A stretch of 64,000 nucleotides of DNA, from NCBI RefSeq assembly GCF_001194135.2, contig NC_068994.1, forward strand, positions 38,416,343 through 38,480,342, given 5' to 3'. Position numbers and translations under genes: made by a program. The stretch is from Octopus bimaculoides (taxonomy: Eukaryota). The notes beneath the pieces were generated by a model, which was not told where the DNA came from, did not search any database, and saw nothing but the letters and a program-made list of their open reading frames with translations. This document shows, piece after piece, positions 5,511 through 63,895 of the stretch. Every line of letters starts with the position of its first letter. Within the stretch, counting starts at the first letter, position 1.

Positions 5511-5767
5511 ACTTACCAACAGTTGTCAGTTGCTTATACAGTTGTTACTGTGCTGTTTCAGTGTTCTTGCAACAAAGTTATAATAGAGGTAGTTCTGAGC
5601 AGTTTGATATGTGATAGTGTTATGTAGTTCTATGAAGTTGGATGTGTAGTATGTAATGTGTGTTGTAGCCAATGACAAGCTGTCTTTTATTCTAATGCAA
5701 GGAAACGGAAGTACAGCATCCAGTTCTTGCAGTTAATGATGGGTTGACTCACAAATTAGTTTACTTT
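5511..5767 (-). promoter_or_regulatory. Putative promoter + non-coding exon 1 of P1
   Basis: One of six ~260-bp homologous blocks, one per gene. TGACTCA (5745-5751), CGGAAGT (5706-5712), TAGCCAATGA (CCAAT at 5669-5673), then donor TTG|GTAAGT at 5517. Confidence 0.72.
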
Positions 5768-5836
5768 CACCTCACACACTTACATATACTTGTGTGTTGG
5801 TAATTTGTACATAAATTGAAGGGATGAAAATAAATA

Positions 5837-6040
5837 TTAGGTTGGTGCAAAATAACTGCGGCTTTTTTTTCAATAACTTTATTCAACAAAAAATTTAAAC
5901 AAAACGCCAAGCAGAAATTGAAGTAAATGGTGAATATGCACTGGTATAATCATTTAAAGATGTTTTTGTTAAATGTTGTTATTGTTTTTCTTGAATAAAA
6001 TTTATTGAAAAAAAGATGCAATAATTATGCCCCAACCTAA
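5837..6040. mobile_element. Mariner-derived MITE (~204 bp)
   Basis: Ends TTAGGTTGGTGCAAAA...TGCCCCAACCTAA with TA on both sides. The TIR resembles the Hsmar1/MADE1 type; subterminal A/T runs are also inverted. Confidence 0.8.
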
Positions 6041-6649
6041 TAATATCTGAAAGGTTTATGTCAAGCAATATATTCATTATTTTAGATAAACTTTTACATT
6101 TGAAAATAATGTTTTAATCCTAAAGGAAAAAAAGTCATTTCTATTATTTCAAGAAAAGTTTACAAAAAGTTTGTATTTCGATAGTTTTTAACTTTTTACT
6201 GATTTTATATATGTCATATATTTAAAAAATTCTTTACAAGATTTTTGAAAATAATTCTTAAACAGTTAATCTGTTTATTTAATTACCTGGAATATGAAAG
6301 TACTGCTTTGAATAATGAATAATTTTTTTTTTAAATGCAATTATGAAAGGAAGAGTCAAATATTCCTTTACAAAAACAGCTGCTAATAAGAGCATTAAAC
6401 TCTTGCAAGTTTGGCTTATTGTATCTAATTTGATCGATTATTAAAAATTTTATATGTTGTTTTAAGAAATATTTAGGTTGATTAAATTTGTGGTTGTAGA
6501 TTAATAATATAAACTGTACGGTAGTGTTGTGCCACCTTTCTGCCTTATAGAGATATAGTTACTAAAATTTTCTTCCACGTTTTATATTTCTAATTTAATT
6601 TGATTAGTGCAAATAATGGTGGTCCATAATTTTTATTCAAGGTATGGAG

Positions 6650-6969
6650 TTAGTTTTGCACTGAAGATGGGGGAGGTACCTGTGATATTGAATGTACCTT
6701 TGGTAGTGTTGTTACTTTAGGTACAGCTGGTAGAGGTGGTTGACAGTTTGAAGTAAACTGACTTGTCATTGGCATTGAAGATGGTTGATCAGTTATGTCA
6801 GACGCGTTACCAGTTATATTCAAAGGTATTTGGTCATGGTAGGAGAAAGTGTTAGTGTCAACGTTTGGTTGATATTGATAGCCATTGTTATCTCCCCTTG
6901 ATCTGTTGAGCGTGTTTGGTGTTTGATTTCTCCTATTCCATGTGTGGTCACTTTGATAATGACGCAGAT
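6650..6969 (-). CDS. P2 terminal cytoplasmic exon 4 (DLRHYQSDHTW...PPLPAVPKVTTLPKV...VQN*); full P2 ~953 aa
   Basis: tatttctag|AT acceptor, phase 1 (G|AT=Asp), open to TAA at 6650. Homologous exons occur in P3-P6. Confidence 0.88.
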
Positions 6970-7827
6970 CTAGAAATAGATTGATTTTTAGGAAGTAAAT
7001 GTGGTAGAAGTTATACTGAATCAATTTTTAACGTTCATGAACACAACTGTATTTTAAGCACTTTTAGACCATACAGTGCTAATAATTTTGTGCATAGTTC
7101 CCAGGTTTGGCAGAATATCATTTTGTAATGCCACTGATAATTAACAAGAACTAAAATTGTTATCTTTTTTGCTTAACTTGTTTGTTGAACCATAACCATA
7201 CACCAAAATATTACTAAAATATATTTAAAATGTTAGTGAGTATATATTCATAAAAAAAAAACACTACTACAATTAATTTCAAAGTAAATGTTCCTTGTTC
7301 GAATCCAGTCCAGTATTACATGTATATTCAGAAATTAAACACTTGATCACTCAAATTAAACTAATCAAAACACCAAAATATAATGTATGTATAGCCAAAG
7401 CAGTCTCACACAGAAATGAGTATCACTTAATAATAACATGTATCATGATTTCACTTGATGCTGTTATGAGCAGGCACAGACAATATCTTGGCCCTCCTAC
7501 CCATTGAGCTAATGGAACATTAGAGATGTGATAGGTAAAGAGAGCAATGGCTACATTAGCACTTGCATGGTACTCATTTCTGCTGAGTAGATGAGTGCAG
7601 CATTAAATTATATACCTTGTTCAAGGACACAAGACACTTTCTAGTACAGAAACTGGACCCATAACTTTATGATTTTGAGCCCAACATTCTGCTACTGGGC
7701 TATTAAAAAACGTTGGCTCTCTAAAGATAAATTTGATAGTCAAGAGTAATTATGACTGTATTAATAATACTCATCATCAGTAGCATACATGTTACTAATG
7801 TAGAAACATTCAGTGTCTCTAACTTAC

Positions 7828-7978: not shown

Positions 7979-8501
7979 CTGGATAGAATTACATAAATCC
8001 AGTGTATCATCATAAAGTTTTACACTTATAAAATTAAACAAATACACAGCACAAGAGTTTAAACATGATATTAAAATATATGTTGGACTGTTTTTAACAT
8101 TTATAGAATAAATATACTTTTACTTTATGACACAGATATGACCATATCATAGAATATACAACATAGAAATAAATTTCATAATCATCAAAGAAAGCAACTG
8201 CATTGTGAATTTTACAATATTTGTTTTGCTTTATTTTATTTTTTTATTTTTTATATTTTTTGTTTTTGTTTTGGAAACAATCTATTAGATTTATTTAGAT
8301 TCAGTATTATATAACTACAACTAATAATTGTTTAGTTACTTTTCATTGATATTCAGGATCATGAAAAGTATTTTAAAGAATAAGGATTACATGAGAATAC
8401 TTTTACACAATAAGGAATTTAGTTTTGATTTTGGCAAAAGAAACAGAAGATGTATGATATTTTGCATTCAATTGTTTTAAGAAGTCTATCAATTATCTTA
8501 C

Positions 8502-10892
8502 CTGTGCATGAGGTCTTAAAACTGAGTGATCCCATCTATCACTTGCCGTGGTTCTATAGTGAAATTCTTCTGTATCTACTGATGGTTGTTGAGATTTCTT
8601 CAGATTTCTCTCCATTGCGTACTGAACTCCAGGAGGAACACAAGTAGGATCAAATATATATTTTGATTGTACGCTTAATGTAGGTGTCACTGTGTGGTAC
8701 ATATCAACACTACTATCATAGTTGCTATCTGTCTGCTTCAGTCTATGAACTATACAGATTGATATAGAGATTACTATAACAACTGACACAATCACAGCTG
8801 CTATAACAATAGCAATCATCACACTAGACTGGAGACCATTACTTGATTCTGTTGTTGTCTTTGAAGGGGTCTTAAATATCTTTGATGTGTTGTTACTAAC
8901 TGTTAGAGTCAAAGACAATGTTGTTGTCGATGACAGAACTGGACTGCCACTGTCTTTCACACCTAATTCCAGTTCATAGAATCCAGCATCGTTTTGGTAA
9001 GGTGAGCGAGAGAAAGATAAGGCACCAGAGTGATGGTTCATTTCAAATAAGTTTTTCTCATTTCCTCTGAGTATTTCATATGTGAGGAAGGCATTGTGTT
9101 GACTGTCTCTGTCAGAGGCCCTAACAACTGTGATATCATGGTCAGAGCGGGGATGGTAGTGGACATTAAGACTGAAAGGGTTAACATTAGGGAAACTGAA
9201 ATAGGGAGCATTATCATTTAAATCTATAACCTCAACAACAACATTTGCTGTGTTCTCCAGTGATGGTGTTCCTTTATCTTTTACTAAAACCTTAAACTCA
9301 TACATGTTCTTTTCTTCTCTGTCTAGTGACTCAGTTGTGGAAATAAATCCCACATCAGATATCTGAAATGGTAGAGTATCTTTTCCATTCGTCAACAGAG
9401 AATAGGTTAATTGTCCTCCATCTCCAGTATCTGGGTCTGTAGCATCAACATATCCCACAGGGAAGTCTTTGTGTTCATTTTCATAGGTGAGGAACTTATA
9501 TATGTCTTGAATAAACTGAGGTTGTACATCATTTATGTCAGTAACCAGCATAGAAAACTGTTTCTCCACTGTCAATGGAGGTAAACTATTATCTTGACAT
9601 TTAATGGTGAAATTTAATCTCTTCTCACTCTCTCTATCTATTTCACTCTTGACAACAACTTTGTATTTCTTTCCAGACAATGAAATTAGCTTAAGGTATT
9701 TATTTTGTAAATGACACTTCACTTGTCCATTTACTCCACTGTCATTGTCAGTAACTTTCACATAAGCAACAAAGCTGTGAATTTGAGTTCCTTCTGAGAT
9801 GACAGCTGTGTTTCCAGTTGACTCTAAGATAAATTTGACATCAATGTTTGGTGGATTGTTAAGGTGACTCATTCCATTAATAAGAACAGTGACAACAGAG
9901 GTCATTGGTGGTTTACCTTTATCACTGGCTTCAATGAATACTTCATAAAATTTTCGAAACTGAAATTCTTTTTTCAAAAATAGCTCTCCTGATGTTTGAT
10001 TTAAAATAAAGAATTTCATATCTTTTTCTGAAGTAAGAGGACTAAAATTATATACAATCGCTCCATTATCACCTTTGTCTAAATCCATTGCTGATAAAAT
10101 GACAATAGGTTTAGTTCTCTCTTGTGTCTCATTTACTGTCACCTTGTAGATATTCTGGGAAAATACAGGAGCATTGTCATTTTTATCTTCTACTAATATC
10201 CTTAAATCCATTAGCCCTTTCTTAGAATGAGATCCCCCATCTGTAGCAATTATTTGAAGATTATAAGTTTCCTTTCTCTCTCTGTCTAATCGTTTCACTA
10301 AAAGCAATTCAATTTTACTTTTCCTATTAGAAACTTTTGAGACCGACAATTGAAAAGTATTTTCCTGGTTATTCCTCAGTTGATAAGAAATATTTGAGTT
10401 CTGAATAGTGACATCTTTATCAAAGGCATTTGGAATGATCTCTTTTATTCCTTTTGGGGTACTTTCATCAAAGAGGATATGAAATTCCTTATCTGGAAAT
10501 ATGGGATAATTATCATTGACATCTTCTATCATAACTTTGATTTCTAATAACTTGATAAAAGAATGGCCATGCTGAACTGCTATTTCCAATATCCTGAAAC
10601 ATTCCACATTATATTGACACAGAGTTTCTGCATCCAATATGACAGCTGTATATAGTTGTCCTCCAGATGTAACATTGAATAACTGAACATCTCTGTCAGT
10701 ACTATGCTGCAGTATTTTAAATGAAAATTTGTTGCTATCATCCTGAGACTGTATATTATCCAGTAAGTTTGTATCACTGACAATATCTCCAATATAGCTG
10801 TGTCTATCATTGTTCTCTTTCACATGGAAGATATGATCTACACACCAGCATCTGTTAGCCATCAGGAGCACCAACATTATCATTAACAACAT
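8502..10892 (-). CDS. Protocadherin P2, large exon (SP, EC1-EC6, TM, juxtamembrane)
   Basis: Uninterrupted 799-aa ORF with six cadherin repeats and a TM. Acceptor ttttcag| (exon starts 10923), ATG at 10892, donor CAG|GTAAGA at 8502 (phase 0). Confidence 0.95.
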
Positions 10893-12807
10893 GGCTGATA
10901 TCTTATGTGTAAGTGTAAACGAGCTGAAAAGAAATCAAATATATAAAAAAAAAGATGGTATATTATCTCTAGTTTACATATTTATGTTATTTATTTTGAG
11001 TACTATATTCATATGAACTTCCTTTTGGCATATTATATAACTATGCAGATGTAACAATGGAATCATTTATAAAATTAAAAATATCTACAATGACAACTTT
11101 GTTTCTTTTGTTCTTTTTTTTTTCAATTATACATCATTATTGTTGTTGTCAAAATGATCTATTTTTAACTTACTTGGCTAGAAGCAAATGATGTAAGATT
11201 CAGTAGAGACTTCGTCTTAGAAATCATATATTAACTACATAACATGAAAGTAACACAACAAGATCATAAATTCAAAAGTACTCCCTCCTCTTCAAATACA
11301 TTTTAATCCTATATATCAGAGAGAATAAAGTTAACTTCCTTCCATTCCAATGCATATTATCGATGAATTATTTTCAACCTGCCTGTCAGACACTTTAGTA
11401 TGAAGCAGACTTACTTGTCTTTGGCCAGAATAGTTTATCTCTGAATTCTCCCATTTAAACATTAGTCATTTATTTTGCCCAGACAGGTTCCCTCTCATGC
11501 TCAAACCTAATTATGTCCTGTGTAACAGCTATGCCATATTTGATTAGAAACGAAGTATTCTTCAACTTCTGTGGGACACAAAGCACCTCTCTCTTGCCTG
11601 TTTCCCTTTGCCTCATCCTCAACATATCTCTGATCTACCTCCAAGACTCACCACCACATTTCATTTTCCATCAATGACTCTCAGGATTTCTTTTCACCCA
11701 TGTCTTTTCCTGTCCCCTTTTTCTCACAACTTCTGCCCATATTTGCCCTCATATAGTGTTAGATAACCTTAGACATCCTTCCCTTGACACAACCCACACT
11801 ATGTCCTTTCAACTCCGTCCCTCCTTGTGTTACCAATCCCTTTCCGCTTCCTTGTTTCTCCTCTCCCCCTCATTTCCTTTTACATAACCTCCCTCAGCCT
11901 TCCATCTAGGACATCTCTCACTCTCTTTTGTTCTCCTTCAGATATGGGGGCCACTTTCTGCCTTTAGCCTTGCAAGTCACTACATGATCATCACTCTTGT
12001 TGGTATCATGTAAAAAGCATCCAGTACCCTCTGTAAAGTAGTTGGTGTAAGGACATCTGGCCATATAAAGCATACTAAAGTGAACACTAATACATGATAT
12101 AGTCCTCTGACTTGTCAGACCCTGTCTAATCTCTGTCAGTATGGAAGCTTGACATTAAGTTGATGATGTTTTATTTGAAGTGAAACAAAAGTTTGTCACC
12201 ATTCTTCAAATATTACAAACTGTTATAGCTTAGAACTGACACAAACTTGGAATGTATTCTAATGACAACTATTTATTTTATGTACTGGCTAGTTCACAAC
12301 CTAAGAGAAACAACCTCATCTTTATCTGTTGCCCCAACACCTGGTCCATGTATGCCAGTAGTAGAGCTCACTCAGTTGCAAGCATTCAGTAATGTCTCCA
12401 TTTTGAGGATAAGTTACTCCAACAAGTCTAGAAGGTACTGAAAAAAGTGGGCCAAGTGGTGCGGTCCCCTCTTTCTCAGATGAAGCAGTTAAATAAACAA
12501 ATGAATAATCAAGTAAATAATCTTAATAGTCAATTATATCACTATTTTTGCCTGAGTCTACTCCTACATTAGTAATAACATAGGATAAAGATATTCTAAA
12601 TATTATACAAAAAAAAGCTAATTATATTAGTATTCATTTCTCATCTTATAATAAATAAATATCTATATAAAATATATTCTATAAGAGCCAATTCATGACT
12701 TTACCAAACTGTCTGAGCTAGTGAAATCACTTTAGTAAGACTTTTGCAGAAAGATGTTGCTAAATGTCTATATAAGTAATTTACATATAGTAGAAACTTC
12801 TAAAAAT

Positions 12808-13070
12808 ACTTACCAATAGTTGTCTATTGTATATACTGTTGTTATTGTACAGTTTCAATGTTCTGGTAACAAAGTGTTGTAGTAGTAGCAGGAGTTCTGA
12901 GTAGTTTGGTATGTAATAGTGTTATATAGTTCTATGAAGTTGGTTGTGTAGTATGTAATGTGTGTTGTAGCCAATGACAAGTTGTCTATTATTTCAATGC
13001 AAGGAAACGGAAATACAGCCTCCAGTTCTTGCAATTAATGATGGGCTGCCTCACAGACTAGTTTACTAAC
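12808..13070 (-). promoter_or_regulatory. Putative promoter + non-coding exon 1 of P2
   Basis: Same block; donor at 12814; AP-1-like site altered to TGCCTCA, ETS-like CGGAAAT. Confidence 0.72.
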
Positions 13071-15153: not shown

Positions 15154-15476
15154 TTAGTTGTTTAGTGTAGATAGAATAGGTACCTGAGGTACTGAAGGTA
15201 CCTTTGGTAGTGTTGTTACTTTAGGTACAGCTGGCAGAGGTGGTTTACAGTCTGAAGTAAACTGACTTGTCATTGGTGCTATAGATGGTTGTTCAGTTAT
15301 GTTAGATGTGGTACTAGATATAGTCAAAGGCACATGGTCAGGATAACAGGAAGTGTTTGAGTCAATATAAGATTGATATTTATAGCCATTGTTGTTATCT
15401 CCCCTTGATCTATCAAGTGTGTGTGGAAGTCGATTCCTCCTACTCCATGTGAGATCACTTTGGTAACGGCATAGAT
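15154..15476 (-). CDS. P3 terminal exon 4 (DLCRYQSDLTWSRRN...KPPLPAVPKVTTLPKVP...LNN*); full P3 ~955 aa
   Basis: Not in the ORF track; translated by hand from atttccag|AT to TAA at 15154, in frame. Confidence 0.87.
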
Positions 15477-16023
15477 CTGGAAATATATTGGTTTATAAAC
15501 CATTTAAAATGCATTCTATACAATATGAACTGGAATTTCATTTCTAAGTTATGTCCATATCGAACCTTTGTTTACACATATCCATATATTGTTGAAACGG
15601 TGTATAAGTAGATATAAGTAATCATAAGATTGTTTACGTAAATTGACTGATTTTTCAGGAATGGAAACTTCAGTTTATAAAGGATCATTTTAAAAGATTT
15701 TTAAAGAGAAACCAAGCTGCACTATTCTTATATAACCACTTTTTTTATTTTCATTTTTAACTTCCTTATTGTGTGAAAGTTTTCAGACTATGTTGGCAAT
15801 CCTAAAGAAAATTTTCAAGTATAGAAGCATAAATCTGTCAGAAAACTTATAAGAAATTGCATTGTAATGCATGAAAAAGGAAAATATTCTCGATATATAT
15901 AAACAACAAACAAACAAAATAAAACAAGATGCTGTTTAAAAAATATATAGCCGTGACAATGGAATCTTTTTGTTGGCTAATGTTGTTAAGGCCATTCTAA
16001 GATTCTTCTGAATAGACTAAATA

Positions 16024-17302
16024 TTAGGTCGTCAAGTATGAAATTTGTAGTAAGTTAATGGTAAACTTTGACAGCTGCACATTTTGCGCCATTATTATAT
16101 TTTGACAATCATTATTTTTTCTTAGAAAGTTGGAACATCTATTTCTTTATTCCAACTAATTTTGCACTTTATAAGGTATTTATAAATCGATTTTTTGCTA
16201 TTTTTGTTTAGATATGGATAAGTCGGAAATTCGTACAGTTTTGAAATATGGATTCTTTCTTGGAAATGCAGCATCACAGACAGCTCGGAATATTAATGGA
16301 GTATTTCATTCTAATGTTATTACACAGCAGACAGTATCAAATTGGTTTGCAAAATTTCATTCTGGTAACTTTGACCTCACAAATGAGCAATGTGGTCAAC
16401 CAGAAACAAAGGTGGATAGCGACAAACTGAAAGCCATCGTCGAGATAGATCCATCTCAAAGTGCCCGTAATTTATCATTGTTATTTGGTGTTAGCAAGCA
16501 AACAATATTGACTCACCTAGTTCAAATCAGTAAGGTGAAAAAGCTGGATAAGTGGGTTCCACATGAACTCAATGAAAATCAAAAGCAGCAACGTTTGGAA
16601 GCCTGCATTATGCTATTTTCTCATCACAATAATGAATCATTTTTTAATCGAATTGTAACATGTGATGAGAAATGGATCGAATGCAACAACCATAAATGTT
16701 CAGCACAATAGTTGGACAAAGACAAACCACCAAAATACAGGCCAAAATGCAAAATTCATCAAAAGAAGCTGATGGTGTGTGTTTGGTGGTCTGGCACAGA
16801 TGTGATCTATTATGATTTCATTAAACCGGGCTCGTCAATCATAGCCGAAGTATACTGCAGCCAAATGGACCAAATAATGCAGAAACTTACAAAAAAACAG
16901 CCTAGATTACTCAACAGATCCACTCCTATTTTATTGTAAAAAAAACGCCAGACCACACATCATAAAAGTGACTTTGGTGAAACTACAGAGTTGGAAGTTT
17001 TCCATCATCCACCATATTCACCTTATCTTGCCCCCACTAACTACCGCTTCTTCCAGAATTTGTATAACTTTCTTATAGAAAAAAAATTTTATTCTGACAA
17101 TGCTGTAAAACAAGCCTTCCAAGATTTTATTGACTCTAGATTATCAGGTTTTTACAGTTTCAGGCTGGACAAGATACCACTGAAATGGCAAAAGTGTCTT
17201 GATAATATGGGTGCATACTTTAATGAATAAAATTATTCCTTGTAGTTATAAAACATTAGCAAACTTTTTTCTTTTCTACAAATTTCATACTTGACGACCT
17301 GA
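16024..17302 (+). mobile_element. Full-length (1279 bp) mariner DNA transposon, inactive, in P3 intron 3
   Basis: 27-bp TIRs (ttaggtcgtcaagtatgaaatttgtag, one mismatch at the right end), TA flanking both ends, internal transposase. Confidence 0.93.
16214..17230 (+). pseudogene. Mariner (D,D34D-type) transposase pseudogene
   Basis: Motifs KLDKWVPHEL, VTCDEKWI, MVCVWW, HPPYSP.LAP. In-frame TAG at 16709-16711, stop and A-run at the HDNA motif (~16937), third catalytic D appears as N. Confidence 0.9.
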
Positions 17303-18557
17303 TATAATCTTCAAACACAAGACATAACACAGAAAGTAATTTGCTTGGAGAAAGTACAATTCAGGAAAAAATACACTGAACAAAACAAAAAAGTTCCTCT
17401 TTTACATGGATACAGGTTTCACAAAAACATACAGCAATTTTAGACTGAATATGGAAACTGTTTGTAATATTTGACATCTCCTGAAAGGTTCACTATGATA
17501 TAGAGATTCCATGAGTCCATTACATCTTAGAACTTAATTCAAAAGGCAACCTCTAATTTGTTCTATAGAACAAGTATTGTAAAAAAGATAGCTTTCTAGT
17601 ACTCACATCATTTCTCTTCCTCTTGATGGCAGTTTTCAAAAACAAAATCTCAGTTGTACAGAGATGGTCATATCTACATTCAGACACATCTAAATACTAA
17701 CATCGAAACCTTCTTTACTCAAAGCTACAATCAAAATACCTCATATTCTTCTTCTTTTGACTTGCCTAGAGCATGACAATGGACATACTACATATCTCTT
17801 TAATTATAGAATTTGTAGTATTCTTCATAATTGTGTCTTTTGAAGCTGATAATAGTTGGGATTGCTGCTCTTTACAGAAATACTACAGCCATTGGTGTTC
17901 TTCCCTCATCATCAACCATTAAAGCACATGTTGCTTGATGAAACCAAGTAAATATCAGTATTAATTAATTACATCCCAGGACTTGAGTGTAACTAAGTTC
18001 TATCAACTCCAGAAGAATGAAAGGCTAAATTCTGAGTACAGATCTCATCAAGGTCAACTTGAGATTTGAACTCAGAATTTAATGGTCTATTTGGCATATT
18101 GTCTAACTGTCAAACAATTCTGCCAATGCACTGCTACTAGTGAAATCCCTATTTTACAAACCTAGAGTATTAATTTCTGCTAATCATAGAGATGTCAATG
18201 CACATGATAGAGAATGTTTTCAAAAACTGATAAATGACTTATAGTTAAAAAAGAGCCACTAAAACAGATTCTACTTCAGACTAAACAAGAATTTTTTAAG
18301 CTTCCAAGACTTCACTAGAGTGAATGAAGTTCACATGTCTTGGCAACACACAACTGATGTTAATGCTCAACAGACTTTGGAAATAAGGAGAAAAATGTCA
18401 AAAGTAAGAATAATATTGGGAAAATTTACTCAACGTATTTCCATGTTCTATATTGACTATGAACGTCTAAGCTATACATGCATGCATGTTTAGATACACA
18501 CATACTTACATATGCCATGTTGTAGTGTTGCACAAATATCTAGTGTTCCTAACTTAC

Positions 18558-18708
18558 CAGGCAGTTCCTCATAATGTCCAGTACTACCGACATTCCAGCC
18601 TTGACTGCTATCTGTGTGAGATGACAATGTTAACATCTCACTGAATTGGTCAGTACTGTTTAATTCTCTGTATCCTGGAGACATACTTTCTTCTCTTGGA
18701 GTGAATAT
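18558..18708 (-). CDS. P3 cytoplasmic exon 3 (151 nt, IFTPREESMSPGYREL...GHYEELP)
   Basis: ctatttag| acceptor, CCTG|GTAAGT donor, paralogous to P2 exon 3. Confidence 0.88.
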
Positions 18709-19016
18709 CTAAATAGAAGTACATAAAGCCATTCTATTATCATAATTTTATGGGCATTCCAAACACACGCACACACACACACAGCATTTTAAGGTTGTCA
18801 ATATTTCAAAATAAAAATTATAAAACAAAGTATTGAAAATAAATTATGACCATACTTAGAATATTTTACTTGTAAATAGTTGTTGTCCAACAAGAAATAA
18901 CTTGCAAATAAGGGTCACTAAAAAAAGCACACAAATTTAAACAAAACCAACTTAAGAAATACTAGACTTCAGGTTTGTAATTCAAACAACTAGTAATTAA
19001 CTATTACATATCTTAC

Positions 19017-21410: not shown

Positions 21411-21638
21411 GACTACAATCTTCAATTGTCTCTGATGTATTAATCTGAAATGGAAATAGATATATAGAGGATAACATTCAATATGCAGAATATATACCGA
21501 GATATTGCTTCCATACCAATACATCATAATTTATGTCAGAATATCAATCATCATCATTAGGTAGCATAAATTCTCACAAAATTTTCTCTTATTGATCAGT
21601 GACTATGAGAATAGTGAAAATTTGATTATCAGCTGATT

Positions 21639-24547: not shown

Positions 24548-24808
24548 ACTTACCAACAGTTGTCATTTATTTTTAAAGTTGTTACTGTACTTTTAAAAAG
24601 TTCTGGCATCGAAAAGTTGTAGTAGTAGCAGAAGTTTTGAGCAATTTGGTATGTAATAGTGCTATGTAGTTCTATCAAGTTGGTTGTGTAGTATGTAATG
24701 TGTGTTGTAGCCAATGACAAGCTGTCTATTATTCCAATGCAAGGAAACGGAAGTACAGCCTCCAGTTCTTGCAGTTAATAGTGGGCTGACTCACAGACTA
24801 GTTTACTT
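24548..24808 (-). promoter_or_regulatory. Putative promoter + non-coding exon 1 of P3
   Basis: Same block; donor at 24554; all three motifs intact. Confidence 0.72.
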
Positions 24809-51153: not shown

Positions 51154-51580
51154 ATCTTCAATTTTCTTCAATATATTCCACTGGTCTGAAATGGATATGT
51201 ACACAGGAAATAAATATGATAGATGTGGTTAGACTTTTCTAATGTAATTATATAAAAATAAATTATGCATACTGTAGTAAGGTTAAAGTAATCTGAACCA
51301 AAAAAAAAAAATTACAGAATATATTAATACTTTTGTCTTGATAAATATAATCATGATAATATAGAAGCTACAGTATATAATGCTGTTAATTACGGAGAAT
51401 TAAGAAATTTTACAACGATGAAGAATAACATTTAGCTAATTATTTGGATATCTTTCAATTGTAAAAGACTTTTCTGGATGTCAGAATCATGCTTTTCTCT
51501 TTGATATTCTAATAGCTTTCTGACACTCTTACAACACTTATGTGAATGATATATGTATACTGTCGCACATATATCAGCAG

Positions 51581-53389: not shown

Positions 53390-53428
<39 letters not shown>

Positions 53429-54378
53429 TGAGTGAGTGTGTGAGTGTGTGTGAGTGTCTCCTGGTGTTGCCATCATTTGATTGTTGTAGATGAAAGTTAT
53501 TTAATTACCATATTCTGCAAAAACATGTCTGGCCTTGGGAAAATATCGCGTTGCCTGGAAACGGATAATGGTTGGCAACAGGAAGGGTGTCCAGTCGTAA
53601 GAAAATCTGCTTAAAGGCAATCTATCTGAGCCGTGCAAGCATGATATAAAAGGACTGAATGATGGTAATAATGATGATTGTGGGTGGGGAAGGGTTAGGG
53701 TTAGGGTTAGAAAAAAATTAAAATTAAGAAATTTACAGTCTCGTCCTAAACTATAATCTCGACCCTTGAACAAATTTTCTTGGTGGTCCAAGATTGTAAG
53801 ACTTGTACCAAAACGTTTACGAAATAATTCACTTTGCATCGTGAAATTTTTCTATTTATTGTTTTCCAAAGCAGTGCATCACTAATTTGTACCGAATTTA
53901 CTATTTTACTAAGAATTGTCTCCCTTGTTCCTGGCTTATTTACTCTATGTTCTAATAATAGAATATGATGAAAATAAGACATATCAAATTTACAATGCAG
54001 CATGGAAATTCGATTATCAAGTATATATATATATATATCTTATGATATCCTATTATTTTACGTCAACATCCTGACTAAATATGGTGCACAATATTATAAA
54101 GATATTTTGATAATTATAATTGTTAAATACATCTATAAGTGATAAGGTTCTATATCAGAATATTTCTTAACACCAACACTATATATTTGTAAAAGGTAAA
54201 GCAGGTGACAATGAAAATTAAGTCTTTACTTAAATAACATGATGATGTGGAAGTCACTAAACTTACTTTTATTGTTGTTTCTTGGAGACAGAGAGAGACA
54301 GAGACACAGAGAGAGAGAAAGAGAGAGTTGTGAATGTCTAAATAAATGATTTACACATAACAGAAACTTTTAAGAAAT

Positions 54379-54640
54379 ACTTACCAAGTTGTTTATTAAT
54401 GCTGCCAGTCGTTTCTACAGTTGCTACTGTACTGTTCCAGTGTTCTGGTAACAAAGTTGTAATAATAACAGGAGCTTGGTATGTGACACTGTTATATAGT
54501 TCTATGAAGTTGCTTGTGTAGAATGTAATGTGTGTTGTGGCCAATGACAAGCTGTCTTTTATTCCAATGCAAGGAAACGGAAGTACAGCCTCCAGCTCTT
54601 GAAGTAAATGATGGGCTGACTCACAGACAAGTTTACTTCC
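54379..54640 (-). promoter_or_regulatory. Putative promoter + exon 1 of P5
   Basis: Same block; donor TTG|GTAAGT at 54385; motifs intact. Confidence 0.72.
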
Positions 54641-57661: not shown

Positions 57662-57809
57662 TGGGATGTCTTTCATGCAGTTTCTATTGGCCAAATTCAC
57701 TCACGATGCATTGGTCAAACTGGGCTTTAGTAATTAATACACATATTTCAACATTATAAGATGTTAAACACATATTTCAACATTATTAAATAACTGACAA
57801 ATATTTTAC

Positions 57810-60418
57810 CTCTGGATGTGTTTCAATGAAAGCTGGTTTACCCCATCTATCACTGCAGTGAACACCTTCTATATCCATCATTGGTTGTTGAGATTTGTTC
57901 ATGTTTCTCTCCAATGTGTACTGAATACCAGGAGGAACAAATGTATACTTTGGTTGGATGTTTAATGTAGGTGTAACCTTGTGGTACATATCAACACTAC
58001 TATTATAGTTGCTATCTGTCTGCTTCAGTCTATGAACTATACAGATTGATATAGAGATCACTATAACAATTGATATGATCACAGCTGCAACAACAATAAC
58101 AATCATCACATTCAATTGGAGACCATTACTTGATTCTGTTGTTGTCTTTGAAGGGGTCTTAAATATCTTTGATGTGTTGTTACTAACTGTTAGAGTCAAA
58201 GACAAAGTTGTTGTTGATGACAGAACTGGACTGCCACTGTCTTTCACACCTAATTCCAGTTCATANNNNNNNNNNNNNNNNNNNNNNNNNNNNNNNNNNN
58301 NNNNNNNNNNNNNNNNNNNNNNNNNNNNNNNNNNNNNNNNNNNNNNNNNNNNNNNNNNNNNNNNNNNNNNNNNNNNNNNNNNNNNNNNNNNNNNNNNNNN
58401 NNNNNNNNNNNNNNNNNNNNNNNNNNNNNNNNNNNNNNNNNNNNNNNNNNNNNNNNNNNNNNNNNNNNNNNNNNNNNNNNNNNNNNNNNNNNNNNNNNNN
58501 NNNNNNNNNNNNNNNNNNNNNNNNNNNNNNNNNNNNNNNNNNNNNNNNNNNNNNNNNNNNNNNNNNNNNNNNNNNNNNNNNNNNNNNNNNNNNNNNNNNN
58601 NNNNNNNNNNNNNNNNNNNNNNNNNNNNNNNNNNNNNNNNNNNNNNNNNNNNNNNNNNNNNNNNNNNNNNNNNNNNNNNNNNNNNNNNNNNNNNNNNNNN
58701 NNNNNNNNNNNNNNNNNNNNNNNNNNNNNNNNNNNNNNNNNNNNNNNNNNNNNNNNNNNNNNNNNNNNNNNNNNNNNNNNNNNNNNNNNNNNNNNNNNNN
58801 NNNNNNNNNNNNNNNNNNNCTCATACATGTTCTTTTCTTCTCTGTCTAGTGATTCAGTTGTGGAAATAAATCCCACATCAGATATCTGAAATGGTAGAAT
58901 ATCTTTTCTATTTGTCAATAGAGAATAGGTTAATTGTCCTCCATCTCCAATATCTGGGTCTGTAGCATTGACATATCCAACAGGGAAGTCTTTGTGTTCA
59001 TTTTCATATGTGAGAAACTTAAATATGTCCTGACTAAACTGAGGTTGTACGTCATTTATATCAGTGACCAGCATAGAAAATTCTTTCTCCACTGTCAATG
59101 GAGGTAAACCATTATCTTGACATTTAATGGTGAAATTAAATCTCTTCTCACTCTCTCTATCTATTTCACTCTTGACAACAACTTTGTATTTCTTTTCAGA
59201 CATTGAGATTATCTGCAGGTATCTATTTTGTAAATGACACTTCACTTGTCCATTTACTCCACTGTCATTGTCAGTAACTTTGACATAAGCAACAAAGCTG
59301 TGAATTTGAGTTGCTTCTGAGATGACAGCTGTGTTTCCAGTTGACTTAATTACAAATTTGACATCAATGTCAGGTCGATTGTTAATGTGACTGATTCCAT
59401 TTATTAGAATAAGGACTGTTGAAGACATTGAAGGAATACCATTATCTCTAGCATCAACAAATAATTTATAAATTCTTCCAAACTGAAAATTTTGCTTTAG
59501 AAACAATTCTCCTGTTGCTTCATCCAACTTAAACCAACGTTTTACAGTACCCAGTGTCTTGGCATTATTAAAGACATAAGAAATTCTTCCATTTTCTCCT
59601 TCATCTAAATCTGTAGCAGACAGCCTCAGAATAGGTTTGTTTATCTGGTGTGTATCATTTATAGTTACATTATAGATATTCTGAGAGAATATAGGAGAAT
59701 TATCATTTTCATCTTGCACTGATATTTCTATATTCAGTATGCCTTCTTTTGGTGGAGATCCTCCATCTTTGGCAATTAATTGAATATCATAAAGATCTTG
59801 TGTTTCACGATCTAAGTTTCCTTCCAGAATTAATTGTAGTACATCACTTCCATCTGATTTTTTAGTTACTAGAAGTTGAAATGGAATATCCACATTATTT
59901 TTTAATTTATAAGAAATCTTTGAATTCTCAATACTGACATCTTTATCAAAGGCATTTAGAATTCTTCCTTTTGAGTCTTTTGAATCACTTTCATCAAATG
60001 TTAAATGAAATTCTGTGTTGGGAAAAATAGGATAATTATCATTGACATCTTCTATTATAACTTTGATTTCTAATATCCTAATAACAGAATAGCCATGTTG
60101 AATGGCTATTTCCAATATCTTGTAACATTCCACATTATATAGACACAGGGTTTCTGCATCCAATATGGCAGCTGTGTACAGTTGTCCTCCAGGTGTAACA
60201 TTGAATAACTGAACAGTTCCCTCAGTACTACCCTGGAGTACATTAAATGTCAATTTGTTGCTATCATCCTTAGACTGTATATTATCCAATAAGTGTGTAT
60301 CAGTGGCGATATCTCCAATATAACTGTTTGTATCATTATTCTCTTTCACATAGTATGTATGATCTACACACCAACAGCTACCAGGCAGAAACAACATCAA
60401 CAATAACGCTGGGAACAT
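57810..60418 (-). CDS. Protocadherin P6, large exon; N-gap 58266-58819 covers end of EC5 and most of EC6
   Basis: ORFs 58250..60490 and 57786..58247. Acceptor ttttgcag| (exon starts 60425), ATG 60418, donor GAG|GTAAAA at 57810. Substituting the P2-equivalent 318 nt gives 2373 nt (791 codons, in frame). Confidence 0.92.
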
Positions 60419-61859
60419 TTTCTGTCTGCAAAAGAATTTTATAGGGAGATAAGCAAATGAAAACTTAATAAATGCACATAAATATAGCATAATATATAGT
60501 CCAATAACTTAACCACATTTGAGATATTGTTTACATGCTACAAGTAGTTAAATATCAACATCAAATATACAACTGGCAACAGTACTATGATACTATGTTG
60601 TAATTTGGTTAATTCACTGGAAATGAAAGTCACTAGACACATACGTTTTTCAGCCTTTACCTATTTAATATGACATCATTGATTACTGACTGATTGAATA
60701 ACATAGAATGATATACATAACTATTATATCACACAGTTTAACACTGGAACTATTATTTTTCCATATTCACATAAACTTTACTACCCCTTCACCATGTCTA
60801 ATCCTCTGAACCACTTCTCTTNNNNNNNNNNNNNNNNNNNNNNNNNNNNNNNNNNNNNNNNNNNNNNNNNNNNNNNNNNNNNNNNNNNNNNNNNNNNNNN
60901 NNNNNNNNNNNNNNNNNNNNNNNNNNNNNNNNNNNNNNNNNNNNNNNNNNNNNNNNNNNNNNNNNNNNNNNNNNNNNNNNNNNNNNNNNNNNNNNNNNNN
61001 NNNNNNNNNNNNNNNNNNNNNNNNNNNNNNNNNNNNNNNNNNNNNNNNNNNNACATAAACTTTACTACCCCTTCACCATGTCTAATCCTCTGAACCACTT
61101 CTCTTATTTTCACCTTTCTTTAACTTGGTGGTATGTATTCACAGCTCTTCACCATCTTTTATCTTCCAACCGAGGTAGCCATGTATCTCTTCTACTGCAA
61201 GTTGCCCTTTTCTGTTTCTTTATCATATTTTAACTGCTTGTCACCTGGCATAAAGCCACCTTTCTTAATACTCCACCTTGCCCATCAGCTGAAGGGTTTC
61301 GTCTTGCAAGTTACTTAATGAGCTCACTTGTGCAATGCTATATAAAATTTACTCAGTACACACTGTGAAGTGTCTGGCTTTAAGAAGAGCATCCAGCTGT
61401 AAAACTGTACCAAAGCAGAAACTGCCTTGTTGGCTCTTGCCAACCTGACCAACCAATGCACACATTGAAAACAGACATTAAATAACATCTACTAAAGAAA
61501 GCATTCTTTTTTTTTCCACAGATTTGGAATTATTAGTAATTCTAATGTAATTATGCATGTCAAATGTTGGATGACTCATTCTATTTTGAATGACGATTTC
61601 TTTTCTTTCTATCTTTTTACTTGTTTTGGTTATTAGACTGTAGCAATGCTGGGGCACTACCTTTAAGAATTGTTTGTCAAATGAATCGATCGCAGGACTT
61701 ATGTTTTTTTTAAGCCTGGCACTTATTTTATCAGTCTCTTTTGCTGAATCACTAAGTTATGGGGACATAAACACACTAACACCAGTTGTCAAGCAGTGGT
61801 GGGTGAGAAATACAGACATAATATATACATATATATATGTGTGTGTGTATGTGTATACA

Positions 61860-62069
61860 TACACAGGTTTGGCCAAAAGTCACCTGACAGTAAATCAAAT
61901 CCATTTAATTCCAAGATTTATTTATGCTTTACAACTGAATGAATTTAATAAAAGCATCTAAATATGAAACATGATGAAAACTGTCCAAACTGAAGTCCTT
62001 CTTGAGCGACACAGTTTTCCATTTCAGTCAATACAGAATTGCAGATAGTATTTATTGAATTTTGATTTA
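61860..62069 (-). mobile_element. Tc1-like element terminus (truncated by gap)
   Basis: TIR-like acaggtttggccaaaagtcacc; minus-strand peptide ...MENCVAQEGLQFGQF resembles a Tc1 transposase C-terminus. Confidence 0.5.
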
Positions 62070-62206
62070 NNNNNNNNNNNNNNNNNNNNNNNNNNNNNNN
62101 NNNNNNNNNNNNNNNNNNNNNNNNNNNNNNNNNNNNNNNNNNNNNNNNNNNNNNNNNNNNNTCCATCTACCGGATCCACTCACAAGACTTTGGTTGGCCA
62201 GAGGCT

Positions 62207-62520
62207 ATTGGGTTTGGTGACTAAGTTACCACCGTTTTCTTAAATTTTCGAATTTATTGCGATTTTAAATTTTGGCATCTATTTTGAGAATTCTATTTTT
62301 GAATCATTTTGGAATCTATTTTGTTTTTTTTTTTTCTAGTTAATTTTAGTTAATTTTTGTTTATTTTCAGATCATTAAAATGGAATGTCAAATTAAGAAA
62401 AACAGGCATTTTCGACACCTCCTTTTTGCTTTTAATCAAGGCCACAAAAGCTGCTCGCGACATTTGTGCTGTGTATGCCAAGTTCAAAAATGGAAATTTT
62501 GACCTCAAAGATGCACCAGC
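62207..62520 (+). mobile_element. Mariner 5' fragment
   Basis: TIR-like ta|ttgggtttggtgactaagttacc; frameshifted N-terminal remnant MECQIKKNRHFRHLL..KAARDICAVY..AKFKNGNFDLKDAP. Confidence 0.65.
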
Positions 62521-63632
62521 AAAGTCACCAAGTAACTTGCAAGACAAGGAATTTTGGGAGTGGAGAGGGCGTTAGGGGAGGTGATCTTGTGTCAAATGAT
62601 GGAAGATAAGAGTATGACAGGGAAACAGAAAGGCAGAAACAGGTGTCTTGCTATAGAGGAGGTAAATGTTTACCTGGCCAAGAGAGAGAGAGAGCGTTGA
62701 GAAGGCTGCCTTAGCCTTGACAAGGACATGGCAAGATTTCCAGTGCAGGCACCACAATAAAATGCAACCAGTACATTCAGTAATGTAGTGGGGAGCTGGA
62801 TGTGAACCAAAAAGATTTTGTTTTCTGGAATAATGTATTCTTGGTAATGATAACCCATATTTTTAACGACACTTTTACATCTGTCAGTTATCAAGACGCC
62901 ACACCACTGTATAAAATTTCCTGGTCTTACATATTAACTTCCTCTAAGTCTATGGCAAAAGAATAAAAAATTCATGTTGTTTAGTCTCAGCTTAGTTTCG
63001 ACCAAGCAGACGGTGATCAAAGACATTCAAATTAAGAACATAAAGACTTTTTCCGGGGTAATTAAATATACGCAGGGCAATGTGTTTCTAAAGACGCTAG
63101 GGTGTTATTCTAGGCATATTTGGCTGCTATTTCTAGTAGGTCAAAAGTCGTAAAGAGTAACCTCCCCTGCTTGTTATGCTTACATCACGCTCAACTTCTA
63201 ATTGTGAAATATTTCTGGATTTATAGTACGGTATTGTTTATTATGTAACATAAAAGTACTTGAAATACAAACAACTAACACTCTAGCGAGTTATTTTTAT
63301 TATTATCCTAACTTATCCATAGAAACTAACATTGTAACGAAATATATGGAAAATAAAATTCAATATATTTTTCTAAGGCTTTAAAAGTTCAACAGTTTTT
63401 AAGATCTACATAATGAATGTTTCAACAGAAGTTTTAGTTAAAAAAAACTGTATTGTTAATAATTGACTAACGTATTTTTCTTTATTAAAACAATATTGTT
63501 ATAATGGAGGTGTGACAAGGCCATTTATATATTGATATAGTTTCACCAGGAAGGTTAGAGAGAGAGAGAGAGAGAAAGAGCTAACCAAACACCAACAAAA
63601 CAATTTACACATCAAAATAACATTGAATAAAT

Positions 63633-63895
63633 ACTTACCAACAGTTGTCAGTTGTTTATACAGTTGATACGGTACTTTTTCAGTCTTCTGGCAACAAAGT
63701 TGAAGTAGTAGAAGCAGTTCTGAGTAGTTTGATGTGTAATAGTGTTATGTAGTTCTATCAAGTTGGTTGTATAGTAAGTAATGTGTGTTGTAGCCAATGA
63801 CAAGATGTCTATTATTCCAATGCAAGGAAACGGAAATACAGCCTCCAGTTCTTGCAGTAAATGATGGGCTGACTCACAGACTATTTCACTTAGAC
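63633..63895 (-). promoter_or_regulatory. Putative promoter + non-coding exon 1 of P6
   Basis: Same block; donor at 63639; TGACTCA, CGGAAAT and CCAAT present. Confidence 0.72.

What the first reader, a model, noticed from the sequence alone, without database searches (positions are those of the whole stretch)
5511..63895. Each protocadherin has its own copy of a conserved promoter/first-exon module: a candidate invertebrate analogue of the clustered-Pcdh promoter element
Seen: a ~260-bp block occurs exactly once per gene, 1.9-9 kb upstream of the coding exon (5511, 12808, 24548, 40673, 54379, 63633), while flanking DNA is poorly alignable. A 27-mer gtaatgtgtgttgt(a/g)gccaatgacaag is invariant except one base. 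In transcription order it carries TGACTCA, CGGAAG/AT and YRRCCAATSR, then ~150 nt, then a fixed TTG|GTAAGT donor. The reading frame is not conserved (TAA early in P1-P3). Established: these motifs match AP-1, ETS and NF-Y consensus sites, and vertebrate clustered Pcdhs use a per-isoform conserved promoter element bound by CTCF for promoter choice. Inference: this is an independently built array of equivalent promoters competing for shared factors or enhancers, a possible basis for per-neuron Pcdh choice. I see no convincing CTCF motif in it.
Basis: partly seen in the sequence, partly recalled or inferred. Interest (0 to 1): 0.85.

Follow-up and report, generated by a model that had tools for sequence, protein, structure and literature searches.

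The report
Octopus protocadherin promoter and leader exon
Each of six tandem octopus protocadherin genes has its own copy of a ~260-bp block, most likely a promoter plus a non-coding first exon, whose ~100-bp core is almost unchanged between Octopus and Argonauta; it gives a way to study how these genes are switched on, but it is the expected result of whole-gene duplication, not a new kind of system.

Summary
The window is an Octopus bimaculoides protocadherin (Pcdh) array with six genes, all on the minus strand. Each gene has exactly one ~260-bp block 1.9-9 kb upstream of its ATG.

Among the paralogues only the coding exons and this block still align. The block has three parts:
- a ~100-bp core: 90% identical among paralogues and 84% between Octopus and Argonauta, against 75% and 70% at third codon positions
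- a G-poor, stop-riddled leader of 121-189 nt
- an invariant TTG|GTAAGTA splice donor

Every coding exon begins with a polypyrimidine-AG acceptor 7-34 nt before the ATG.

The same block sits one per gene in O. vulgaris and Argonauta hians. It is absent from ~199 kb around three other O. bimaculoides Pcdh genes and from another cephalopod Pcdh array. It is therefore neither a dispersed repeat nor a Pcdh-wide element.

Best reading: a proximal promoter (bZIP, ETS and NF-Y-type sites) plus a non-coding exon 1, inherited by whole-gene tandem duplication and kept by purifying selection.

I could obtain no transcript, so the transcription start and the exon 1-exon 2 junction are inferred. No CTCF-like or CGCT-box motif is present. 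Promoter competition or stochastic choice remains untested speculation.

The parts
5507..5764 (-). Block P1, upstream of g1. Core 5654-5755 (TGAGTCA at 5745-5751, CGGAAGT at 5706-5712, CCAAT box at 5668-5676, + strand coordinates). Leader 5517-5653. Donor TTG|GTAAGT, with the last exon base at 5517.
12804..13066 (-). Block P2, upstream of g2. Core 12956-13057, with the bZIP site degenerate (TGAGGCA) and the ETS variant ATTTCCG. Leader 12814-12955. Last exon base at 12814.
24544..24806 (-). Block P3, upstream of g3. Core 24696-24797. Leader 24554-24695. Last exon base at 24554. Its orthologue in O. vulgaris is L002:6632-6894, 92% identical.
40669..40911 (-). Block P4, upstream of g4, with an intron of about 9 kb that contains three assembly gaps. 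This is the most divergent copy: TGAGTCA is lost and the ETS core is mutated (ACTTTTG), but the CCAAT box and the donor are intact. Core 40807-40900. Leader 40679-40806.
   Evidence: The O. vulgaris orthologue L013:2228-2447 shares the same lesions.
54375..54636 (-). Block P5, upstream of g5. Core 54526-54627, with the single variant base of the 27-mer (GGCCAAT). Leader 54385-54525.
63629..63889 (-). Block P6, upstream of g6. Core 63779-63880. Leader 63639-63778.
830..3216 (-). g1 exon 2, the large cadherin-repeat exon. Acceptor TTTTATCAG| gives an exon start at 3216. ATG at 3185. Interrupted by the gap 1313-1438. Exons 3 and 4 lie beyond the window start.
8493..10923 (-). g2 exon 2. Acceptor TTCTTTTCAG| gives an exon start at 10923. 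ATG at 10892. The 3' limit is approximate.
19014..21444 (-). g3 exon 2. Acceptor CCATTTCAG| gives an exon start at 21444. ATG at 21410. Encodes residues 1-799 of P0001, NCBI 'protocadherin beta-3-like' of Octopus bimaculoides.
29284..31706 (-). g4 exon 2. Acceptor TTTATTTCAG| gives an exon start at 31706. ATG at 31687.
48557..51185 (-). g5 exon 2. Acceptor CCATTTCAG| gives an exon start at 51185. ATG at 51153. Interrupted by the gap 48985-49484.
57792..60425 (-). g6 exon 2. Acceptor TTCTTTTGCAG| gives an exon start at 60425. ATG at 60418. Interrupted by the gap 58266-58819.
15154..18708 (-). g3 exons 3 (18532-18708) and 4 (15157-15483 plus stop), each gene's own cytoplasmic exons. Paralogous exon 3 / exon 4 pairs, with approximate limits: g2 7804-8022 / 6641-6990; g4 28589-28757 / 26782-27008; g5 44873-45091 / 44228-44537; g6 56888-57050 / 55888-56189.

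Best explanation
The block is the proximal promoter plus the non-coding first exon (the 5' leader) of each gene in one octopod-specific protocadherin subfamily.

**Origin.** It was copied along with the whole gene unit (promoter-exon 1, intron 1, exon 2, exon 3, exon 4) by tandem duplication. It has since been kept by purifying selection while introns and intergenic DNA decayed.

**Inferred mechanism.**
- A TATA-less core of about 100 bp recruits a bZIP factor at TGAGTCAGC (AP-1 or CNC/small-Maf type). It also recruits an ETS-family factor at ACTTCCG plus an adjacent invariant GTTTCC, and NF-Y at a perfect inverted CCAAT box (TCATTGGCTA).
- Transcription would then start some tens of nucleotides downstream of the CCAAT box.
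- The A/C-rich, G-poor leader, which should have little structure, is spliced from TTG|GTAAGT to the acceptor 7-34 nt upstream of each ATG.

**Consequence.** The genes share nearly the same core, so they are wired to the same trans-factors and are expected to be a co-regulated set. Lineage-fixed differences such as P4's loss of the bZIP and ETS sites would tune individual members.

**Shown:** the anatomy, the one-per-gene arrangement, the conservation pattern, the splice-site consensus and the subfamily restriction.

**Inferred:** that the block is transcribed and spliced, where transcription starts, and which factors bind.
For: - **One block per gene.** All blocks are in the gene's orientation: 6 of 6 in the window. 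Every block found also lies upstream of a gene in O. vulgaris L002 (3 blocks) and L013 (2) and in Argonauta hians L003 (4).
- **Gene model.** Protein P0001 maps to exon 2, exon 3 and exon 4 of one unit. Only these exons and the block align among paralogues.
- **Graded conservation, as expected for a promoter followed by a leader and a donor.** The core is 0.90 identical among O. bimaculoides paralogues and 0.835 between Octopus and Argonauta. The leader is 0.73 and 0.52. The donor window is 0.83 and 0.90. The flanks are 0.33-0.49. For comparison, third codon positions are 0.754 and 0.705, and whole-CDS nucleotide identity is 0.824 and 0.784.
- **Invariant sites.** GTCATTGGC is invariant in 14 of 14 copies, as are GTTTCCTT and TTGGTAAGTA.
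- **Orthologues, not neighbours, are each other's closest relatives.** P3 and Ovu_a are 0.92 identical, and P4 and its orthologue share lesions. The copies have therefore evolved separately since before the O. bimaculoides / O. vulgaris split.
- **The leader looks non-coding.** It is 121-189 nt with 6-13% G. No reading frame is free of stops in every copy, and it holds 6 ATGs against about 19 expected from its composition.
- **Acceptors.** A conserved polypyrimidine-AG acceptor lies just upstream of every ATG, and paralogue homology starts there in five of the six genes. Other octopus Pcdh genes also begin their coding exon with such an acceptor.
- **Not a repeat.** There are no hits in about 199 kb of other O. 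bimaculoides sequence.
Against: - No transcript, CAGE or splice-junction evidence could be obtained. The protein collection holds no RNA-derived contigs for this subfamily.
- The O. vulgaris gene ranges returned start at the ATG, so a 5' exon is not visibly annotated there.
- One annotated O. vulgaris isoform (P0121) reads through the next gene's block to a small terminal exon. The block can therefore also lie inside an upstream gene's primary transcript.
- Factor assignments rest on consensus sequences recalled from general knowledge, not on matrix scans or binding data.
- P4 keeps the block without the bZIP and ETS sites, so those two sites are not indispensable.
- The copies are related by descent, so counts of 'invariant in 14 of 14' overstate independence. 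In Argonauta three copies are 99-100% identical because the duplication is recent.
Confidence: 0.75

Rival explanations
1. The ~100-bp core is not the promoter. It is part of the transcribed 5' UTR, acting as an RNA-level element for translation, stability or localisation. Transcription would start in the unconserved DNA further upstream.
For: - No transcription start is known.
- The ATG-poor, stop-rich character extends over the whole block.
- The sharp 5' boundary of conservation would also fit an exon start.
Against: - The most conserved stretches coincide with full consensus sites for DNA-binding factors (TGAGTCAGC, ACTTCCG, TCATTGGCTA).
- RNAalifold finds no compensatory pair and gives a positive covariation term.
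- There is no Rfam match.
- A promoter with no conservation next to an ultra-conserved UTR would be unusual.
Confidence: 0.1
2. The similarity of the blocks reflects concerted evolution, that is gene conversion or recent duplication, rather than selection on a function.
For: - In Argonauta, blocks b, c and d are 99-100% identical while their coding exons are 89-92% identical.
- In O. vulgaris and Argonauta, the 3' part of the unit plus the next block is more similar than exon 2: 89% against 84%, and 96% against 92%.
- Gene conversion has been proposed for cephalopod Pcdh arrays (PMC9068888).
Against: - In the window no two blocks are more than 89% identical.
- Introns and intergenic DNA right next to the blocks are unalignable.
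- Orthologous blocks across species are closer than paralogous ones and share private lesions.
- The core is conserved between Octopus and Argonauta above the level of the coding sequence. Conversion within a genome cannot produce that.
Confidence: 0.05
3. The block is a fragment of a dispersed repeat or transposable element that happens to lie near these genes.
For: The window does contain real dispersed repeats and a mariner-type transposase remnant.
Against: - It is strictly one per gene, always in the gene's orientation and always upstream.
- There are no hits in about 199 kb of other O. bimaculoides DNA, nor in L006.
- The positions are orthologous in three species.
- There are no terminal repeats.
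Confidence: 0.02
4. The conserved core is an intergenic boundary element serving the upstream gene, for example a terminator, pause site or insulator 0.9-3.3 kb after its stop codon. On this reading the donor is incidental.
For: - The block lies close to the 3' end of the preceding gene.
- An annotated O. vulgaris isoform reads through it.
- Read-through Pcdh transcripts are reported in O. vulgaris (PMC9712504).
Against: - The donor and 11 nt around it are invariant in all copies, while the adjacent leader drifts.
- A matching acceptor precedes each ATG.
- The distance from the preceding stop codon to the block is variable (about 0.9-3.3 kb).
- P6 was not checked for an upstream gene, because the window ends just beyond it.
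Confidence: 0.05

Closest known systems
Vertebrate clustered-Pcdh promoter conserved sequence element (CSE, the CGCT box that binds CTCF) upstream of each alpha, beta and gamma variable exon (as reviewed in PMC7811963)
   Same: One copy of a conserved promoter motif per Pcdh unit in a head-to-tail array. The motif is more conserved than its surroundings.
   Different: - There is no CGCT box and no CTCF-like site in the block.
- The octopus core carries bZIP, ETS and CCAAT-type sites.
- It is separated from the coding exon by a 1.9-9 kb intron, whereas the CSE lies just upstream of the ATG of the same exon.
- It is limited to one subfamily rather than shared across clusters.
- There are no shared constant exons (PMC9068888).
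- The two are not homologous.
Vertebrate Pcdh-beta cluster (from general knowledge: complete genes without constant exons, each with its own promoter)
   Same: A tandem array of complete, same-orientation Pcdh genes, each with its own promoter copy.
   Different: The octopus genes have four exons including a non-coding leader exon. The promoter motif content differs. No distal enhancer or looping evidence exists for octopus.
Generic NF-Y/ETS-type TATA-less promoters duplicated within tandem gene families
   Same: A consensus CCAAT box with the preferred flanks, an ETS core and an upstream bZIP site within about 100 bp. Paralogues inherit the promoter by whole-gene duplication.
   Different: The degree of conservation is high for an invertebrate promoter: the core is 84% identical between Octopus and Argonauta, against 70% at third codon positions. 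Binding and start-site position were not tested.
Chelicerate shortened-Dscam arrays that use alternative promoters (cited in PMC6339937)
   Same: An invertebrate cell-recognition gene array in which diversity is tied to many promoters.
   Different: In that system the variable 5' cassettes share downstream exons. Here each gene is complete.

Membership tests
Vertebrate Pcdh CSE / CTCF-binding promoter element | A conserved CGCT box within the element | tested here: not met
   No CGCT occurs in any of the 13 aligned copies. The core has a single CpG, inside the ETS site.
Vertebrate Pcdh CSE / CTCF-binding promoter element | A CTCF recognition motif (CCASYAGRKGGCRSY) | tested here: not met
   The window has 4 matches at up to 2 mismatches, against 1.46 expected. 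None is in a block and none recurs per gene. The consensus was recalled from memory, and no matrix scan was done.
Vertebrate Pcdh CSE / CTCF-binding promoter element | One element per variable exon, at a similar short distance upstream of the ATG, across all clusters | tested here: not met
   It is one per gene, but 1.25-9 kb from the ATG, separated by an intron. It is absent upstream of three other O. bimaculoides Pcdh genes.
Vertebrate Pcdh CSE / CTCF-binding promoter element | CTCF/cohesin-dependent looping to a shared enhancer, with stochastic choice | not testable with these tools
   This needs ChIP or CUT&RUN, Hi-C and single-cell isoform data.
Promoter plus non-coding first exon | A consensus 5' splice site at the 3' edge of the block | tested here: met
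   TTG|GTAAGTA is invariant in 14 of 14 copies from three species.
Promoter plus non-coding first exon | A matching 3' splice site in front of the coding exon | tested here: met
   A polypyrimidine-AG lies 7-34 nt upstream of every ATG. Paralogue homology starts there in five of the six genes.
Promoter plus non-coding first exon | No conserved reading frame in the exon | tested here: met
   No reading frame is free of stops in every copy. Length varies and the sequence is low-complexity.
Promoter plus non-coding first exon | Capped transcripts that start in the block and are spliced to exon 2 | not testable with these tools
   No transcript-derived contigs for this subfamily could be retrieved.
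NF-Y-dependent CCAAT promoter | A CCAAT pentamer with the preferred flanks (YRRCCAATSR) | tested here: met
   TAGCCAATGA matches at all 10 positions in 13 of 14 copies. P5 has TGGCCAATGA, which also fits.
NF-Y-dependent CCAAT promoter | A position about 60-100 bp upstream of the transcription start, and NF-Y binding | not testable with these tools
   The transcription start is unknown.
Dispersed repeat / transposable element | Many copies in both orientations, unrelated to gene position | tested here: not met
   Fifteen copies were found in the subfamily loci, each upstream of a gene and in its orientation. None was found in about 199 kb of other O. bimaculoides DNA. The whole genome was not searched.
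Structured RNA element | A conserved secondary structure with covariation, or an Rfam match | tested here: inconclusive
   There is no Rfam match. Of 29 predicted pairs, none shows compensatory change. The core hardly varies, so covariation could not be seen.

The most novel reading that the evidence does not exclude
The near-identical cores make the members of this octopod-specific Pcdh subfamily compete for one limiting activator complex or shared enhancer. Alternatively, they interfere with each other through read-through transcription from the gene upstream. Either way, each neuron would end up expressing only a subset. That would be a promoter-choice system convergent with the vertebrate CSE/CTCF system but built from NF-Y, ETS and bZIP sites.
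Probability: 0.1. Interest if true: 0.8.

Novelty: new member of a known kind. Interest (0 to 1): 0.4.

Why it matters
**The open question.** How cephalopod protocadherin arrays are regulated is described as still enigmatic (PMC10658181). Published work covers the expansion by full gene duplication (PMC9068888) and cell-type and per-cell expression (PMC9712504). I found no paper in the searchable library that describes a promoter element for these genes.

**What the element offers.**
- A sharply bounded ~100-bp core, kept from Octopus to Argonauta, gives candidate regulators to test (NF-Y, an ETS factor, an AP-1 or CNC-type bZIP).
- It gives a defined sequence for reporter and accessibility assays.
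- It marks a set of roughly ten genes per species expected to be co-regulated.

**Limits.** A promoter copied with each gene is what whole-gene duplication predicts. The element is not shared by the other Pcdh genes I could examine. It is therefore not evidence for a vertebrate-like choice mechanism.

Tried and rejected
- **Transcript evidence.** I looked for RNA-derived (Logan) contigs of this subfamily in three ways: cluster membership, a 250-aa N-terminal query and a 10-sequence N-terminal profile. None exists in the collection. The Logan contigs of a more distant Pcdh (P0117, L007-L012) turned out to be unspliced or genomic, with the acceptor still present upstream of the ATG.
- **Other Pcdh loci.** Two look-ups gave no DNA because the gene range exceeds 100 kb (P0021, P0036). 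One protein was not on record (P0023).
- **Metagenome scan.** A scan with the 21-mer around the CCAAT box gave one hit, a GC-rich bacterial contig, which is a chance match.
- **CTCF consensus scan.** Nothing in the blocks.
- **RNA structure.** Rfam found nothing in the whole window and RNAalifold found no covariation.
- **A block hidden in the gap 34170-34633.** This gap sits at the usual 2-3 kb from the g4 ATG. I rejected the idea because the gap-free O. vulgaris orthologue has no block there and has its block 7.55 kb upstream, with P4's private lesions.
- **A seventh Pcdh gene between 31.7 and 40.6 kb.** None was found.
- **The O. vulgaris terminal mini-exon downstream of the block.** It is not conserved in O. 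bimaculoides.
- **Literature.** Six searches found no paper describing a conserved cephalopod Pcdh promoter motif. Albertin et al. 2015 is not held in the library.

Full report
**What the window is.**
The 845-aa ORF at 18990-21527 (minus strand) is 100% identical to NCBI 'protocadherin beta-3-like' of Octopus bimaculoides (P0001, 955 aa). The encoding contig is CM046614.1 of GCA_001194135.2. The fetched locus L001 is exactly colinear with the window, so the window corresponds to about 38,416,343-38,480,342 of that record.

Six large cadherin-repeat exons lie on the minus strand. There is no seventh between 31.7 and 40.6 kb.

Mapping P0001 gives the gene model: exon 2 at 21410-19014 (residues 1-799), exon 3 at 18708-18532, and exon 4 at 15483-15157. 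A self-comparison of the window shows the same exon 3 and exon 4 pair behind each large exon. So each gene is complete and owns its cytoplasmic exons. This agrees with the published statement that cephalopod Pcdh diversity arose by full gene duplication without shared final exons (PMC9068888).

**Checking the observation.**
- The 27-mer occurs six times, against none expected.
- A profile of the block finds six copies and no others.
- The donor 9-mer occurs only at the six reported coordinates.
- In the self-comparison the only segments that align among the six repeat units are exons 2, 3 and 4 and the block. Everything else that repeats is microsatellite or dispersed repeat.

The reported distances (1.9-9 kb), the motif order and the absence of a reading frame are all correct.

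**Assembly gaps.**
None of the six blocks touches a run of N.
- Three gaps lie in the 9-kb interval between P4 and g4. One of them (34170-34633) sits where a block would be expected at the usual 2-3 kb spacing. It is flanked by CA/CT microsatellite.
- In the gap-free O. vulgaris assembly, the g4 orthologue (P0005, 85% identical) has no block in that interval. Its block is 7.55 kb upstream. That block shares P4's private changes. So P4 really belongs to g4 and the long intron is real.
- The gaps inside exon 2 of g1, g5 and g6 have colinear flanks. Their N-lengths do not match the missing codons, so nothing can be said about frame.

**Anatomy of the block.**
I aligned 13 copies: six from O. bimaculoides, three from O. 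vulgaris and four from Argonauta hians. A fourteenth, the O. vulgaris P4 orthologue, was aligned separately. The block has three parts.

1. *Core, about 100 bp.* In transcription order it reads GTCTGTGAGTCAGCCCATCATTAACTGCAAGAACTGGAGGCTGTACTTCCGTTTCCTTGCATTGGAATAA.AGACAGCTTGTCATTGGCTACAACAC. It is 0.90 identical among the six paralogues and 0.835 between Octopus and Argonauta.
2. *Leader, 121-189 nt.* It is 0.73 and 0.52 identical. In Argonauta it decays into ACT repeats. It is A/C-rich with only 6-13% G, no frame is free of stops in every copy, and it holds 6 ATGs against about 19 expected from its composition.
3. *Donor.* TTG|GTAAGTA is invariant.

Flanks on both sides are at noise level, 0.33-0.49.

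For comparison, the coding exon is 0.824 (nucleotides) and 0.754 (third positions) identical among paralogues. Between Octopus and Argonauta it is 0.784 and 0.705. The core is therefore more constrained than the protein-coding sequence, while the neighbouring introns have diverged beyond alignment.

**The acceptor side.**
Every coding exon is preceded by a polypyrimidine tract and AG 7-34 nt before the ATG. In five genes this reads TTTCAG|, and similarity among the paralogues begins exactly there. In g6 and in Argonauta the acceptor is TTTGCAG| or TTTACAG|. Three unrelated O. bimaculoides Pcdh genes and a Logan contig of another Pcdh show the same arrangement. A 5' non-coding exon therefore looks like a general feature of octopus Pcdh genes.

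**Distribution.**
- The block is present upstream of every subfamily gene that I could see:
  - O. vulgaris L002: 6632, 16066 and 24882
  - O. vulgaris L013: 2228 and 20365 (L013 overlaps L002 in the record, and its block at 20365 is the same one as L002:6632)
  - Argonauta L003: 837, 6914, 14835 and 23110
- With the most permissive filters it is absent from L004 (116 kb), L005 (52 kb) and L015 (31 kb). These surround three other O. bimaculoides Pcdh genes (44-53% identical) and include 10 kb upstream of each ATG.
- It is also absent from L006, a Pcdh tandem array of another cephalopod.
- The protein hits fall from at least 70% identity to about 54% with nothing between. The block therefore belongs to one discrete octopod subfamily.
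- In L006 two neighbouring units share other short conserved segments about 2 kb upstream of the ATG. Other arrays may thus have their own modules, but with two copies this is only a hint.

**Selection or conversion?**
- In the window no two blocks exceed 0.89 identity.
- Orthologues are closest to each other: P3 and Ovu_a are 0.92 identical, and P4 and its orthologue share the loss of TGAGTCA and of the ETS CpG.
- The copies have therefore evolved independently since before the two Octopus species split.
- Conservation between Octopus and Argonauta cannot come from within-genome conversion.
- Recent duplication or conversion does occur. Argonauta blocks b, c and d are 99-100% identical within units that are 96% identical in non-coding DNA but only 92% in exon 2. 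In O. vulgaris the corresponding figures are 89% against 84%.

**What it most likely does.**
The invariant stretches coincide with full consensus sites. These assignments come from my own knowledge of the consensus sequences, not from a matrix scan.
- TGAGTCAGC fits AP-1, or NF-E2/CNC with a small Maf.
- ACTTCCG is the reverse of CGGAAGT and fits ETS. It is followed by an invariant GTTTCC.
- TCATTGGCTA is the reverse of TAGCCAATGA and is a perfect YRRCCAATSR, fitting NF-Y.

With the donor at the 3' edge and the acceptor before each ATG, the most economical reading is a TATA-less proximal promoter followed by a short, unstructured non-coding leader exon.

The transcription start is not known. 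By analogy with NF-Y promoters it should lie some tens of nucleotides downstream of the CCAAT box, inside the part of the leader that still aligns with Argonauta.

There is no CTCF-like site and no CGCT box, no Rfam family and no covariation.

**Comparison with the vertebrate system.**
The resemblance is one of layout: one conserved promoter element per Pcdh unit in a head-to-tail array. The defining features of the vertebrate CSE were tested and not met. These are the CGCT box, the CTCF motif, a position just upstream of the ATG, and presence across clusters. The elements are not homologous, and the octopus genes share no constant exons.

Whether the octopus promoters compete or are chosen stochastically cannot be addressed here. 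Published single-cell data report about 19 Pcdh genes per cell, some ubiquitous and some cell-type-specific. They also report read-through transcripts between neighbouring Pcdh genes (PMC9712504).

One annotated O. vulgaris isoform (P0121) indeed splices from inside exon 4 to a mini-exon about 270 nt beyond the next gene's exon 1 donor, so its primary transcript crosses that promoter. That mini-exon is not conserved in O. bimaculoides.

**Verdict.**
The 'promoter plus first exon' reading is well supported by sequence anatomy and comparative evidence, but it lacks transcript proof.

'Independently built' is wrong, because the copies are homologous products of whole-gene duplication. 'Analogue of the CSE for promoter choice' is an untested extrapolation, and the element is confined to one subfamily.

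No description of it was found in the searchable literature. I classify it as an undescribed instance of a known kind of feature: a selectively maintained promoter in a tandem gene family. It is of moderate interest as an experimental handle.

Noticed in passing
Other O. bimaculoides Pcdh genes on CM046614.1; L004 10001-105821; L005 10001-41868: Several Pcdh genes outside this subfamily have coding ranges of 32-135 kb, with 25-74 kb introns between the large ectodomain exon and one of the small 3' exons. One annotated gene range (10001-145645) overlaps the next Pcdh gene on the same strand (93101 to beyond 155645). This is very unlike the compact 6-kb genes of the window. It may be worth checking whether these models are real or are annotation chimeras.
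   Followed up: partly
L003 12490-15657 vs 20628-23929; L002 13467-16858 vs 22261-25676: Between recently duplicated units in Argonauta and O. vulgaris, the non-coding 3' part of the unit (exons 3 and 4, the intergenic DNA and the next block) is more similar than the ectodomain exon 2: 96% and 89% against 92% and 84%. This suggests either diversifying selection on the ectodomain or conversion limited to the 3' part.
   Followed up: partly
L002 14952 and 16594-16620 (O. vulgaris); P0121: An annotated isoform of one Pcdh gene splices from an internal donor in exon 4 to an 8-codon terminal mini-exon (RITKLLNV*). That mini-exon lies in intron 1 of the next gene, about 270 nt past that gene's exon 1 donor. 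The primary transcript therefore reads through the neighbour's promoter. The mini-exon is not conserved in O. bimaculoides.
   Followed up: yes
L013 13217-19485 (O. vulgaris): The 1091-aa model P0005 joins exons 3 and 4 of the g4 orthologue to a second exon 3 and exon 4 pair. That second pair lies behind a decayed exon 2 fragment (17093-17428). This is a relic gene with no block of its own that has been absorbed into its neighbour's gene model.
   Followed up: partly
window 16214-16711 (+): A 165-aa ORF with the HTH_48 domain of Mos1/mariner transposases (E 2e-13). It lies in the intron between exons 3 and 4 of g3 and is a transposon remnant.
   Followed up: partly
window 32810-33197, 46105-46494, 56338-56734 (-): A repeat of about 390 bp, 93% identical in three copies and in both orientations, lying in introns and intergenic DNA. 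It is a young dispersed repeat unrelated to the block.
   Followed up: no
window 23059-23462, 37756-38100, 42015-42227 (-), 43459-43637 (-), 53232-53441, 61615-61838 (-): A second, older dispersed repeat family (67-82% identical, both orientations). It recurs in intron 1 or the intergenic DNA of most units and accounts for some of the GC-richer stretches.
   Followed up: no
window 35132-35764; 28129-28344; 21919-22038; 36901-37198: Long imperfect palindromes (self-inverted matches of 68-73%) in introns. They may be foldback or MITE-like elements.
   Followed up: no
L006 7868-8177 vs 15507-15806: In an unrelated cephalopod Pcdh tandem array (ENA contig), two neighbouring units share short conserved non-coding segments about 2 kb upstream of the ATG. 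This hints that other arrays carry their own per-gene upstream modules with different sequence.
   Followed up: partly
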